The notes under the pieces were generated by a model. The model worked only from the letters and a program-made list of their open reading frames with translations. It searched no databases and was not told the origin of the DNA. A stretch of 63,586 nt of DNA, counting the filler, from Octopus bimaculoides (taxonomy: Eukaryota), in the NCBI RefSeq assembly GCF_001194135.2. It is 4 parts of 4 records of this genome, joined end to end, with 100 filler letters (N's around TTAATTAATTAA, not from the genome) between each part and the next. Parts side by side here need not be neighbours in the genome. Positions count along the whole stretch, not along the records: positions 38,535 to 63,586 come from NC_068992.1; 3 more parts are not named here. One strand, given 5' to 3'. Position numbers and translations under genes: made by a program. The stretch's first letter is position 1; the number at the start of each line of letters is the position of its first letter. Shown here one piece after another: positions 61,396 through 62,334 of this stretch.

Positions 61396-61610
61396 GTTTT
61401 AATTTTTTCAATCTACGGAGAAATAGCTAAATTTGTCCCGTTTGTATAGCTGCTATATAAATACAAACTTGTTACCTGTTCAAAATATACTTGAAGCGTA
61501 TTCGAACCCGTAAGAAAACTTTTTACTTTGTGTTGTCATGGTGAAAATTTCTCGCTGTATATAGACAGGTGTAAACACATGGTGTCTGTCAGTAGCACCC
61601 TCTAACCAGA

Positions 61611-61658
61611 CAGTTAGATGCAAGCATTTCGGAGTGGTTATCTCCTCCTCAGCAACAG
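61611..61658 (-). ncRNA. Type I hammerhead (family H5, unit 1)
   Basis: CUGUUG-CUGAGGA-GGAG-AUAACCA-CUCC-GAA-AUGC-UU-GCAU-C-UAACUG; AUC site. Confidence 0.8.
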
Positions 61659-61947
61659 AGACTATAAAAGTAGACGCTACGAAATGAAAGAGGTCCTCCT
61701 TCAGATATTCCCGTCATCATTCAATGACTGCTTGTGCTATTCAGTAGCTCGCCGTAAATAAAATACAGAGTGATAGCGCAAAGCAGTGACGTGTATAAGT
61801 ACTAACTTTTTGCCAATTCGAATATGCTTTGGGCATATTCGAGTCCGTGAGAAAGGTATTCGCTGTATTTTGTCACGGAGAAAATTTCTCGATGTAGACA
61901 GAAAGGTGTAAAGCCACCGAATCAGTTCGCATTGCTCTCTAACCAGA

Positions 61948-61995
61948 CACTTAGATTCATACATTTCGGAGTGGTTATCTCCTCTTCAGCAGCAG
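61948..61995 (-). ncRNA. Type I hammerhead (family H5, unit 2, stems I and III decayed)
   Basis: CUGCUG-CUGAAGA-GGAG-AUAACCA-CUCC-GAA-AUGU-AU-GAAU-C-UAAGUG. Confidence 0.7.
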
Positions 61996-62334
61996 AGTCT
62001 CTGAAAAGAAGACACTACGAAAGAATACGAGAGGCAGGTCATTTTATGCTATTCCCGTCATTATTCAGTGATTGGTTACTCTATTCAACGACTAGATGAC
62101 AAGAATATTATTAGAAACAGCCCGATTGTTCTATCCAAAGGGATTCTTAGCATAATATTTACACGTATTATTTATAGTTTTTGTATACTTCGAGATCCAA
62201 TTATAAATTAGAATTCTTTCATGTTCTCTCGAAAGTTTATAAATTCCACTGCCTCAACAACATATCTATCTATTTCTCTCTCTCTCTCTTTATCTCTCTC
62301 TCTTTCTCTCTTTCTCTCTCTCTCTATCTATCTG

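What the first reader, a model, noticed from the sequence alone, without database searches (positions are those of the whole stretch)
61484..62088. Tandem hammerheads 337 nt apart: candidate retrozyme / circular-RNA unit
Seen: a direct repeat of ~337 bp in which each unit carries a minus-strand type I hammerhead (CUGAGGA and CUGAAGA cores, identical GGAG/CUCC stem II, GAAAU..AUC site) and no ORF. Established: tandem type I hammerheads a few hundred nt apart define metazoan non-LTR retrozymes, which self-cleave into monomers that circularise. Inference: this is a cephalopod retrozyme family whose monomer runs between cleavage sites at ~61954 and ~61617. Stem decay in unit 2 suggests this locus is old; the consensus stem III may be the palindrome AUGCAUGCAU.
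Basis: partly seen in the sequence, partly recalled or inferred. Interest (0 to 1): 0.85.

Follow-up and report, generated by a model that had tools for sequence, protein, structure and literature searches.

The report
Octopus tandem hammerhead-ribozyme retroelement relic
Two adjacent ~340-base non-coding repeats in the Octopus bimaculoides genome each carry an intact-looking self-cleaving hammerhead ribozyme, which makes the locus an old octopus copy of the known "retrozyme" class of ribozyme-bearing mobile elements, not a new kind of system.

Summary
Window 61456-62093 (minus strand) holds 1.87 head-to-tail units of a ~340-nt non-coding repeat. Each unit has a type I hammerhead: CUGAGGA/CUGAAGA core, GGAG/CUCC helix II, GAAA, AUC cleavage triplet. 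The cleavage sites, after 61954 and 61617, are 337 nt apart. My descriptor finds 3 hammerheads in the piece against 0.01 expected, but no Rfam model scores them.

The locus is Octopus bimaculoides chromosome CM046612.1, in unannotated (intergenic) DNA. I recovered four more family copies. All end at the same unit position, and their 5' ends vary. One repeats the tandem junction. Their hammerheads are decayed.

Outside the ribozyme, the two window units are as diverged from each other as from unlinked copies (~70% identity). Their hammerhead spans are 87-90% identical, which suggests selection on the ribozyme.

The structure fits the metazoan non-LTR retrozyme class, a non-autonomous element probably mobilised by Penelope-like elements. 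Self-cleavage, circular RNA, copy number and homology to a Penelope terminus are all untested.

A third, unrelated type I hammerhead lies 1.5 kb upstream at 63508-63476.

Verdict: a new member of a known kind, of moderate interest.

The parts
61456..62093 (-). Whole insertion: a partial tandem of 1.87 units. It consists of a 5'-truncated unit A followed by a full unit B.
   Evidence: Self-BLAST, repeat finder and nhmmer with the 2-unit profile, which hits 62093->61794 and 61749->61456. GC is 40%. No target-site duplication was found.
61794..62093 (-). Unit A. This is the upstream unit on the minus strand. It is 5'-truncated and lacks the first ~50 nt of the unit.
   Evidence: Alignments A1, A3 and A4.
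61744..61793 (-). First ~50 nt of unit B (the 'linker' between the two ~290-nt repeated blocks). It is a real part of the family unit.
   Evidence: Logan contig L010 486-877 aligns colinearly to window 61839->61455 across this segment. The homology is visible in A3.
61456..61743 (-). Remainder of unit B, ending at the family's shared 3' terminus.
   Evidence: Four independent copies end at the equivalents of 61455-61473.
61937..61997 (-). HHR-A, a type I hammerhead. Core CUGAAGA 61989->61983; helix II 61982-61979 with 61971-61968; GAAA 61967->61964; helix III AUGUAUGAAU; C17 = 61954. Helices I and III are weakened.
   Evidence: The hand-built hammerhead fold scores +6.5 kcal/mol. The helix III duplexes are weak: AxA -0.6 and AxB -2.6 kcal/mol.
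61599..61661 (-). HHR-B, a type I hammerhead. Core CUGAGGA 61652->61646; helix II 61645-61642 with 61634-61631; loop 2 AUAACCA; GAAA 61630->61627; helix III AUGCUUGCAU; C17 = 61617. Helix I is GUUG/UAAC plus a distal UCUCU/AGAGG.
   Evidence: The hammerhead fold scores -4.0 kcal/mol. The BxB helix III duplex scores -8.5 kcal/mol.
61617..61953 (-). Predicted 337-nt monomer released by cleavage after C61954 and C61617. It would be the candidate circular RNA if both ribozymes cut.
   Evidence: Coordinates read. GC is 42%; the circular MFE is -83.6 kcal/mol with z = -1.8. Cleavage and circularisation are inferred, not shown.
61603..61641 (-). Candidate loop-loop pseudoknot. Loop 2 UAACCA (61640->61635) is complementary to the helix I 3'-strand bulge UGGUUA (61608->61603). 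The sequence is identical in both units (unit A: 61977->61972 with 61945->61940).
   Evidence: 6 bp Watson-Crick, -5.6 kcal/mol. 2.5% of shuffled tails reach 6 bp. 88% of cells pair across 5 copies. This was noticed post hoc and is not proven.
61818..61842 (-). Conserved 10-11-bp hairpin near the unit's 3' end (unit A copy). Its 5' arm carries GGTTCGAAT in the family consensus.
   Evidence: Self-inverted BLAST hit. 89% of cells pair in 5 copies, with one G-C to A-U swap.
61479..61506 (-). The same conserved hairpin in unit B, 23-50 nt from the shared 3' terminus. It is a candidate recognition element for reverse transcriptase (inference).
63427..63557 (-). HHR3, an unrelated third type I hammerhead on the same strand. 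Core CUGAAGA 63508->63502; helix II AGGG/CCCU; GAAA; helix III of 1 bp plus the palindromic loop CUCGAG; A17 = 63476; helix I CGUACG/CGUACG. It sits at the tip of a long hairpin.
   Evidence: The 141-nt fold scores -59 kcal/mol with z = -7.85. The fragment is a 328-bp island between assembly gaps.

Best explanation
This is an old genomic copy of a short (~340 nt), non-coding, hammerhead-bearing retroelement of octopods. In structure it is a metazoan non-LTR retrozyme, the class now argued to be non-autonomous derivatives of Penelope-like elements.

Shown:
- The locus holds 1.87 head-to-tail units on the minus strand.
- Each unit has a complete type I hammerhead core and a 4-bp helix II.
- The family is dispersed. 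Its copies share one 3' end and differ in 5' truncation. One other copy repeats the tandem junction.
- The ribozyme span at this locus is much better preserved than the rest of the unit.

Inferred life cycle, by analogy with PMC7229834:
1. Tandem units are transcribed from the minus strand.
2. The hammerheads have a helix III that is unstable alone but self-complementary (family consensus AUGCAUGCAU). They pair between neighbouring units and cut after the AUC triplets.
3. [quoted passage not shown]
4. A retroelement reverse transcriptase, most likely from a Penelope-like element, starts at a fixed site next to the conserved 3' hairpin. It copies more than one unit length, leaving 5'-truncated partial tandems.

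At this particular locus HHR-A has weak helices I and III, so efficient release of the monomer today is doubtful.
For: - Repeat and motifs.
- Significance: 3 motifs observed against 0.01 expected in 1000 shuffles; 0 in 153 kb of other cephalopod DNA.
- Class features: period 337-344 nt; GC 40-42%; longest ORF 75 aa, with no protein homologues. No gene is annotated across the locus, and retrozymes are reported as enriched in intergenic DNA (bioRxiv 10.64898/2026.07.22.740005).
- Family: Logan contigs L008/L009, L010 and L011, plus a partial copy in O. vulgaris L006.
- Insertion architecture: all copies end at the equivalents of 61455-61473 and have variable 5' ends. L010 spans the unit junction including the 50-nt segment.
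- Helix III: no monomer hairpin is stable. Duplexes score BxB -8.5 and consensus x consensus -13.4 kcal/mol. The five-copy consensus is AUGCAUGCAU. This matches the 'canonical metazoan type I' architecture that works as dimers in tandem repeats (PMC4209133).
- Selection signal: the hammerhead span is 55/61 identical against 159/226 for the rest (Fisher p = 0.0014). Outside the span, A-B identity (69.6%) equals A-L010 (68.9%) and B-L010 (69.1%). Inside the span, A-B is 87% against 57-70% for every other pair. None of the six differences touches the core, helix II, loop 2 or its complementary bulge.
- Host background: octopus genomes carry many Penelope-like elements, with an expansion at JC ~0.2 (PMC13282606). 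That is the same distance as these copies from their consensus.
Against: - No Rfam hammerhead model reports any of the motifs, even at E<=10 on ~100-nt windows. Motif identity therefore rests on a descriptor and on manual reading.
- Nearest-neighbour folding does not favour the hammerhead fold: B -4.0 against an MFE of -14.2, and A +6.5 kcal/mol.
- HHR-A has only two contiguous proximal helix I pairs, and the AxB helix III duplex is weak at -2.6 kcal/mol.
- The other family copies have broken cores or helix II. Covariation across 5 copies is weak: 50 of 500 shuffles reach the observed score.
- Only 1.87 units are present, not a long array.
- No RNA evidence was obtained. Only three family-derived ORFs exist in the 15-billion-protein collection, all from one run series.
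- A fixed 3' end is not what random priming on circles predicts.
- The AUC cleavage triplet is rare among classical natural hammerheads (PMC1636495).
- The selection argument carries ascertainment bias, because the locus was picked for having two intact motifs.
Confidence: 0.72

Rival explanations
1. The units are terminal repeats (pLTRs) of an autonomous Penelope-like element, or an internally deleted Penelope copy, and not a separate non-autonomous family. The hammerheads would be the ordinary Penelope pLTR ribozymes.
For: - The architecture of a 5'-truncated upstream copy followed by a full copy, with a fixed 3' end, is the typical Penelope insertion structure (PMC8557442).
- Xenopus retrozymes are sister to Penelope pLTRs (bioRxiv 10.64898/2026.07.22.740005).
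- Octopus genomes hold many Penelope families (PMC13282606).
- A third hammerhead lies 1.5 kb away beside assembly gaps that could hide coding sequence.
Against: - No reverse transcriptase or endonuclease ORF lies between or next to the units. The six-frame search of the units and of the HHR3 island found no protein homologue.
- None of the four other copies is attached to coding sequence on its 1.0-1.7-kb contig.
- The ribozyme has the canonical architecture (helix II of 4 bp, short palindromic helix III). It does not have the Penelope 'min-HHR' architecture, which has a helix II of 6-8 bp and little or no helix III (PMC4209133).
Confidence: 0.15
2. It is an ordinary dispersed SINE-like repeat whose hammerhead is a fossil with no role in its spread. 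The two units arose from a local duplication or from two adjacent insertions.
For: - Most recovered copies are solo units with dead ribozymes.
- The copies have a fixed 3' end and 5' truncation, as SINEs and LINEs do.
- A B-box-like GGTTCGAAT motif is conserved in the unit.
Against: - L010 independently shows the same in-register unit junction, so tandem insertion is a family property.
- ARAGORN finds no tRNA-like head.
- The hammerhead span, including loop 2 and its complementary bulge, is specifically preserved in both window units while the rest decayed to the family background. A functionless fossil would not show this.
- The B-box-like match is not significant on its own. My estimate is ~0.15 expected per 1.4 kb.
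Confidence: 0.1
3. The hammerhead motifs are chance matches in AT-rich repeat DNA.
For: No Rfam model hit.
Against: - 3 motifs observed against 0.01 expected, with 0 of 1000 shuffles reaching 3.
- All 13 core nucleotides, G10.1-C11.1, A15.1-U16.1 and H17 are present in both units.
- The motif lies at the same unit position in the family, and the family consensus rebuilds a palindromic helix III.
Confidence: 0.01

Closest known systems
Metazoan non-LTR retrozymes (Cervera & de la Pena 2020, PMC7229834), for example the Mytilus galloprovincialis 350-390-bp repeats and the axolotl 330/350-bp repeats
   Same: - Type I hammerhead in every unit.
- Head-to-tail units of ~340 bp.
- GC below 45%.
- No ORF.
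- Occurs as dimers and partial tandems.
- Helix II of 4 bp and a short self-complementary helix III, implying dimeric cleavage.
- The host genome is rich in Penelope-like elements.
   Different: - Only 1.87 units are present here.
- Expression, self-cleavage and circular RNA are untested.
- The cleavage triplet is AUC.
- A possible 6-bp Watson-Crick loop 2/helix I bulge pairing takes the place of the archetypal loop-loop contacts.
- Copies share a fixed 3' end.
- I found no cephalopod example in the searchable literature.
Penelope-like element pseudo-LTRs with minimal hammerheads (Cervera & de la Pena 2014, PMC4209133; Craig et al. 2021, PMC8557442)
   Same: - Type I hammerhead in a repeated terminal region.
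- Partial-tandem insertion with a 5'-truncated upstream copy.
- Probably the same mobilising enzyme.
   Different: - There is no reverse transcriptase/GIY-YIG ORF at or near any recovered copy.
- The unit is 340 nt, not several kilobases.
- The ribozyme has the canonical architecture, not the 'min-HHR' one.
Newt satellite 2 and Schistosoma Sm-alpha hammerhead repeats
   Same: ~330-nt repeats with a type I hammerhead whose weak helix III makes cleavage depend on two adjacent copies (as summarised in PMC7229834 and PMC4209133).
   Different: The sequences are unrelated. Those families are abundant and shown to be transcribed, whereas abundance and transcription are unknown here.
Plant LTR retrozymes (PMC4918200)
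   Same: A non-autonomous, non-coding element with two hammerhead-bearing direct repeats that could release a circular RNA.
   Different: Plant elements have type III hammerheads, GC above 55%, a 600-1000-nt unit with primer-binding site and polypurine tract, and 4-bp target duplications. None of these is seen here.

Membership tests
Metazoan non-LTR retrozyme | Type I hammerhead with a complete catalytic core (C3-A9, G12-A14, A15.1-U16.1, H17) and helices I-III, with the open end at helix I | tested here: met
   Both units meet it. Descriptor hits are 3 against 0.01 expected. Helix I of unit A is weak.
Metazoan non-LTR retrozyme | Hammerheads lie in head-to-tail tandem repeats of ~150-450 bp, from dimers upward | tested here: met
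   The period is 337-344 nt with 1.87 units. A second locus, L010, shows the same junction.
Metazoan non-LTR retrozyme | Low GC (below 45%) and no coding capacity | tested here: met
   GC is 40-42%. The longest ORF is 75 aa, and the six-frame search gave no hits.
Metazoan non-LTR retrozyme | Multicopy family in the genome whose copies retain the ribozyme | tested here: inconclusive
   Four further copies were found, but their hammerheads are decayed. Genome-wide copy number is not obtainable with these tools.
Metazoan non-LTR retrozyme | Transcribed, self-cleaving, and accumulating as circular RNA of monomer size | not testable with these tools
   No RNA data were accessible. The nature of the Logan runs SRR11869385-91 is unknown.
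Metazoan non-LTR retrozyme | Coexists with autonomous Penelope-like elements in the host genome | not tested
   Literature only: O. vulgaris has 31 recently active Penelope-like families (PMC13282606). This was not checked in O. bimaculoides.
Penelope-like element pLTR | The repeats flank, or are joined to, an ORF encoding reverse transcriptase plus GIY-YIG endonuclease | tested here: not met
   There is no such ORF in the piece or on the family contigs. The assembly gaps at 63041-63258 and beyond 63586 leave a small loophole.
Penelope-like element pLTR | 'min-HHR' architecture: long helix II (6-8 bp), short helix I, and no or minimal helix III | tested here: not met
   Helix II is 4 bp and helix III is a 10-nt near-palindrome. 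The definition is from PMC4209133.
Penelope-like element pLTR | Sequence homology of the unit to a known Penelope terminus | not testable with these tools
   No Repbase or Dfam library and no whole-genome nucleotide search of Octopus was available.
Rfam hammerhead families (Hammerhead_1 and relatives) | Covariance-model score at or above the gathering threshold | tested here: not met
   No hammerhead hit at gathering or at E<=10. The specialist groups search for such motifs with RNAmotif descriptors, not covariance models (PMC4209133, PMC8557442).
Plant LTR retrozyme | Type III hammerhead in ~350-bp LTRs flanking a central region with primer-binding site and polypurine tract; 4-bp target duplications | tested here: not met
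   The ribozymes are type I, only 50 nt lie between the repeated blocks, and no target duplication was found.

The most novel reading that the evidence does not exclude
The window locus is not a dead relic. It would be a long-lived, selectively maintained tandem-hammerhead locus, either a source element or a domesticated self-cleaving RNA. Both ribozymes, including a Watson-Crick loop 2/helix I bulge pseudoknot, would have been kept intact for roughly 50 million years while the rest of each unit drifted to the family background. It would still produce a 337-nt circular RNA in octopus tissues.
Probability: 0.15. Interest if true: 0.55.

Novelty: new member of a known kind. Interest (0 to 1): 0.4.

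Why it matters
Ribozyme-bearing tandem repeats (retrozymes) are a recently recognised source of abundant small circular RNAs in animals. Their link to Penelope-like elements is currently under debate. I found no report of a cephalopod example.

This family adds a mollusc lineage with very large, repeat-rich genomes. It also gives two usable observations:
- Insertions share a fixed 3' end next to a conserved hairpin and are 5'-truncated partial tandems. This supports target-primed, Penelope-style mobilisation over random priming on circles.
- At one locus the ribozyme, with its loops, is preserved far above the unit background.

If octopus tissues contain the predicted 337-nt circle, that would extend ribozyme-made circular RNAs to cephalopods. 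If they do not, this is one more fossil of a known element class.

Tried and rejected
- Rfam at gathering threshold and at E<=10 on the whole piece and on three short windows gave no hammerhead hit. The only hits were weak chance matches to TCL6_1 and algC.
- A six-frame concatenated translation of the units and the HHR3 island, searched against 5.8 billion proteins, found nothing.
- The exhaustive representative search with the frame through HHR-B later found three family ORFs. Its fourth hit, P0121, is a 52-aa-period repeat protein. I treated it as a repeat-inflated chance match and did not follow it.
- Exact and degenerate hammerhead patterns in JGI metagenomes and IMG/VR gave 0, 1 and 1 matches. 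L001 and L007 look like chance matches with no helix I.
- I looked up window ORFs in the assembly index. They are not on record.
- I tried to reach the orthologous locus in O. sinensis or O. vulgaris through hAT-gene homologues. L005, L006 and L012 are paralogous transposon insertions, not orthologues.
- L002 turned out to be the window's own locus, but past the piece edge it continues only into an assembly gap.
- Target-site duplications: only chance 5-mers.
- tRNA-like head: none.
- Type II/III topology via the UCUAAC/GUUAGA hairpin after the cleavage site: rejected, because no CUGANGA follows it.
- Identity of runs SRR11869385-91: not found in the paper library.
- Gene conversion as the cause of hammerhead identity: considered unlikely, because six differences are interspersed across the 61-nt span. 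It is not excluded.

Full report
**1. What is in the sequence**

The piece (38535-63586) is AT-rich draft eukaryotic DNA, 36% GC, full of microsatellites and N gaps. At the flagged site, 61456-61743 matches 61794-62087 at 74% identity over 296 nt. Spacing between the copies is 337-344 nt.

Each copy carries a type I hammerhead on the minus strand:

| | HHR-B | HHR-A |
|---|---|---|
| Core | CUGAGGA, 61652->61646 | CUGAAGA, 61989->61983 |
| Helix II | GGAG/CUCC, closing loop AUAACCA | same helix II and loop |
| GAAA | 61630->61627 | 61967->61964 |
| Helix III | AUGCUUGCAU | AUGUAUGAAU |
| Cleavage nucleotide | C17 = 61617 | C17 = 61954 |
| Helix I | GUUG/UAAC plus distal UCUCU/AGAGG | only two contiguous proximal pairs |

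The longest ORF across the units is 75 aa.

**2. Is it more than chance?**

I used a descriptor in the style of the specialist laboratories: exact core, helix II of at least 3 bp, helix I of at least 2 bp, helix III of at most 12 nt.
- It finds 3 motifs in the 21 kb of real sequence. The mean over 1000 dinucleotide-preserving shuffles is 0.01, and none reached 3.
- It finds none in 153 kb of other cephalopod loci fetched later.

Against this, no Rfam hammerhead model reports the motifs at gathering threshold or at E<=10, even on ~100-nt windows. The groups that study these elements search with RNAmotif descriptors (PMC4209133, PMC8557442). I therefore count the Rfam result as missing support, not as refutation.

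**3. Where it comes from**

A degenerate hAT-type gene lies at 53845-54699. Its homologues led to locus L002, which is 100% identical to the window. L002 is Octopus bimaculoides GCA_001194135.2, chromosome CM046612.1, 40.22-40.24 Mb. That gene is the only one annotated in the 20 kb, so the repeat lies in unannotated, apparently intergenic DNA. Beyond the piece edge the assembly continues only as a gap.

**4. The family**

Translating the frame through HHR-B turns the ribozyme into the peptide AEEEITTPKC. An exhaustive search of 1.84 billion representative proteins with this translation found three spurious ORFs, P0122-P0124. A profile search returned only those same three. Their DNA, plus an nhmmer hit in O. 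vulgaris L006, gives four further copies at 63-69% identity.

Three things follow.
- *The 50-nt 'linker' is part of the unit.* The segment 61793->61744 lies between the two ~290-nt blocks. L010 486-877 aligns colinearly to 61839->61455, across a unit junction. In-register tandem insertion is therefore a family property.
- *All copies end at the same unit position and start at different ones.* The ends fall at the equivalents of 61455-61473. The lengths are 1.87, 1.15, 0.9 and 0.85 units. A fixed 3' end with variable 5' truncation is the mark of target-primed reverse transcription. A 5'-truncated copy followed by a full copy is the classic Penelope insertion structure (PMC8557442).
- *The other copies' ribozymes are dead.* L008 has UUGAGGA and helix II GGAA/CUCC. 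L010 has helix II AGAA/CACC. The L011 core is destroyed. Even so, the five-copy majority consensus reads CUGAAGA-GGAG-AUAACCA-CUCC-GAAA-UGCAUGCAUC.

**5. How the ribozyme would work**

None of the helix III sequences forms a stable hairpin alone. As duplexes they score as follows:

| Duplex | kcal/mol |
|---|---|
| B x B | -8.5 |
| consensus x consensus | -13.4 |
| A x B | -2.6 |
| A x A | -0.6 |

This is the 'canonical metazoan type I' design: helix II of 4 bp and a short palindromic helix III. Such ribozymes cleave poorly as single motifs and well as dimers in tandem transcripts (PMC4209133, PMC7229834).

Loop 2 (UAACCA) is perfectly complementary to UGGUUA in the 3' strand of helix I, in both units. 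The pairing is 6 bp at -5.6 kcal/mol, and 2.5% of shuffled tails do as well. It holds in 88% of cells across five copies. It is a candidate for the tertiary contact that natural hammerheads need, but I noticed it post hoc and it is unproven.

Nearest-neighbour folding does not prefer the hammerhead fold for either unit: B scores -4.0 against an MFE of -14.2, and A scores +6.5 kcal/mol. The exact helix I register is ambiguous. The cleavage triplet AUC is catalytically good but rare among classical natural hammerheads (PMC1636495).

Covariation over five sequences is weak. 83% of cells pair, against 28-46% when the partners are slid. However, 50 of 500 shuffles reach the observed covariation score.

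**6. A selection signal at this locus**

- Between units A and B, the 61-nt hammerhead span is 55/61 identical, against 159/226 for the rest (Fisher p = 0.0014).
- Outside the span, A and B are no closer to each other (69.6%) than either is to the unlinked copy L010 (68.9% and 69.1%). All copies sit about JC 0.2-0.3 from the consensus.
- Inside the span, A-B is 87%, against 57-70% for every other pair.
- The six A/B differences fall at N7, inside helix III and in helix I. None touches the core, helix II, loop 2 or its complementary bulge.

Simple decay at the background rate would almost never leave some 40 positions intact in both units (0.82^80 is about 1e-7). The likely readings are purifying selection on the ribozyme during the A/B divergence, either in situ or in an active lineage before insertion. 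A less likely reading is local homogenisation combined with ascertainment, since the locus was chosen for its two intact motifs.

JC ~0.2 equals the distance at which Penelope-like elements and LINEs expanded in Octopus, about 56 My by the calibration in PMC13282606.

**7. Other anatomy**

- A 10-11-bp hairpin lies 23-50 nt from the shared 3' end (61818-61842 and 61479-61506). It is kept in 89% of cells, with one G-C to A-U exchange. By analogy with 3' stem-loops recognised by retroelement reverse transcriptases, it is my candidate for the priming signal. This is inference.
- The 337-nt monomer has 42% GC. As a circle it is only moderately structured, with z = -1.8.
- No target-site duplication and no tRNA-like part were found.

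**8. Classification**

The locus meets every structural criterion of the metazoan non-LTR retrozyme class (PMC7229834):
- a type I hammerhead in each unit;
- head-to-tail repeats of ~340 bp;
- GC below 45%;
- no ORF.

The host genus is rich in Penelope-like elements, though I know that only from the literature.

The functional criteria (transcription, self-cleavage, circular RNA) and genome-wide copy number could not be tested.

The locus does not meet the definitions of a coding Penelope pLTR, because there is no reverse transcriptase/endonuclease ORF and the ribozyme is not of the 'min-HHR' type. It does not meet the plant LTR retrozyme definition or any Rfam hammerhead family threshold. Homology to a Penelope terminus remains untested. 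A 2026 preprint argues that retrozymes derive from such termini (10.64898/2026.07.22.740005), so that boundary is blurred anyway.

I found no paper reporting hammerheads or retrozymes in cephalopods.

**9. Verdict**

It is unproven in function.

It is a new member of a known kind. The points of interest are the Penelope-like insertion architecture of the family and the locus-specific preservation of both ribozymes.

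Noticed in passing
window 63427-63557 (-), core 63508->63476: A third type I hammerhead, unrelated in sequence to the units. It reads CUGAAGA, AGGG/CCCU, GAAA, a 1-bp helix III with the palindromic loop CUCGAG, a GUA cleavage triplet and a 6-bp helix I. It sits at the tip of a 141-nt near-perfect hairpin (-59 kcal/mol, z = -7.85), on the same strand and 1.5 kb upstream of the units. The fragment is a 328-bp island between two assembly gaps, which could hide a collapsed tandem array or a Penelope element.
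   Followed up: partly
window 53845-54699 (+): A degenerate hAT-type transposase gene (FAM200/ZBED5 RNase-like domain). In O. bimaculoides it is annotated as 'SCAN domain-containing protein 3-like' (P0001). It has many paralogues in O. bimaculoides, O. vulgaris and O. sinensis. It served to identify the genome and locus.
   Followed up: yes
window 42126-42474, 46925-47178, 52397-52784, 56005-56486, 58474-58840: Several copies of a ~350-bp SINE-like dispersed repeat. Numerous copies, 74-92% identical, occur in the O. vulgaris locus L012 and in L003, L005 and L006. It is unrelated to the hammerhead units.
   Followed up: no
window 61497-61505 (-) and family consensus (A4 columns 257-265): The motif GGTTCGAAT forms the 5' arm of the conserved 3' hairpin and is conserved in the family. 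It resembles the RNA polymerase III B box (GGTTCGANNCC). There is no A box or tRNA-like fold, and the match is not significant on its own.
   Followed up: partly
window 61617-61619 and 61954-61956 (-): Both hammerheads cleave after an AUC triplet. It is described as catalytically favourable but essentially absent from the classical natural hammerheads (PMC1636495).
   Followed up: partly
window 45419-45538: A 31-nt tandem repeat (3.9 copies, 92% matches; unit CGAGCGATGCTGACAGAGAACGTGCAAAGAA) of unknown nature.
   Followed up: no
L010 (SRR11869391), L011, L008/L009 (SRR11869390/85): The only family-derived ORFs in the 15-billion-protein collection come from one series of Logan-assembled runs. 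I could not determine the species or library type of these runs. Their flanks share octopus repeats at only 72-84% identity, which suggests another cephalopod species.
   Followed up: partly
L001 3038-3064 (+) and L007 1555-1582 (-): Single matches to a degenerate hammerhead core/helix II pattern, one in an IMG/VR contig and one in a JGI metagenome contig. They lack a helix I and look like chance matches.
   Followed up: partly
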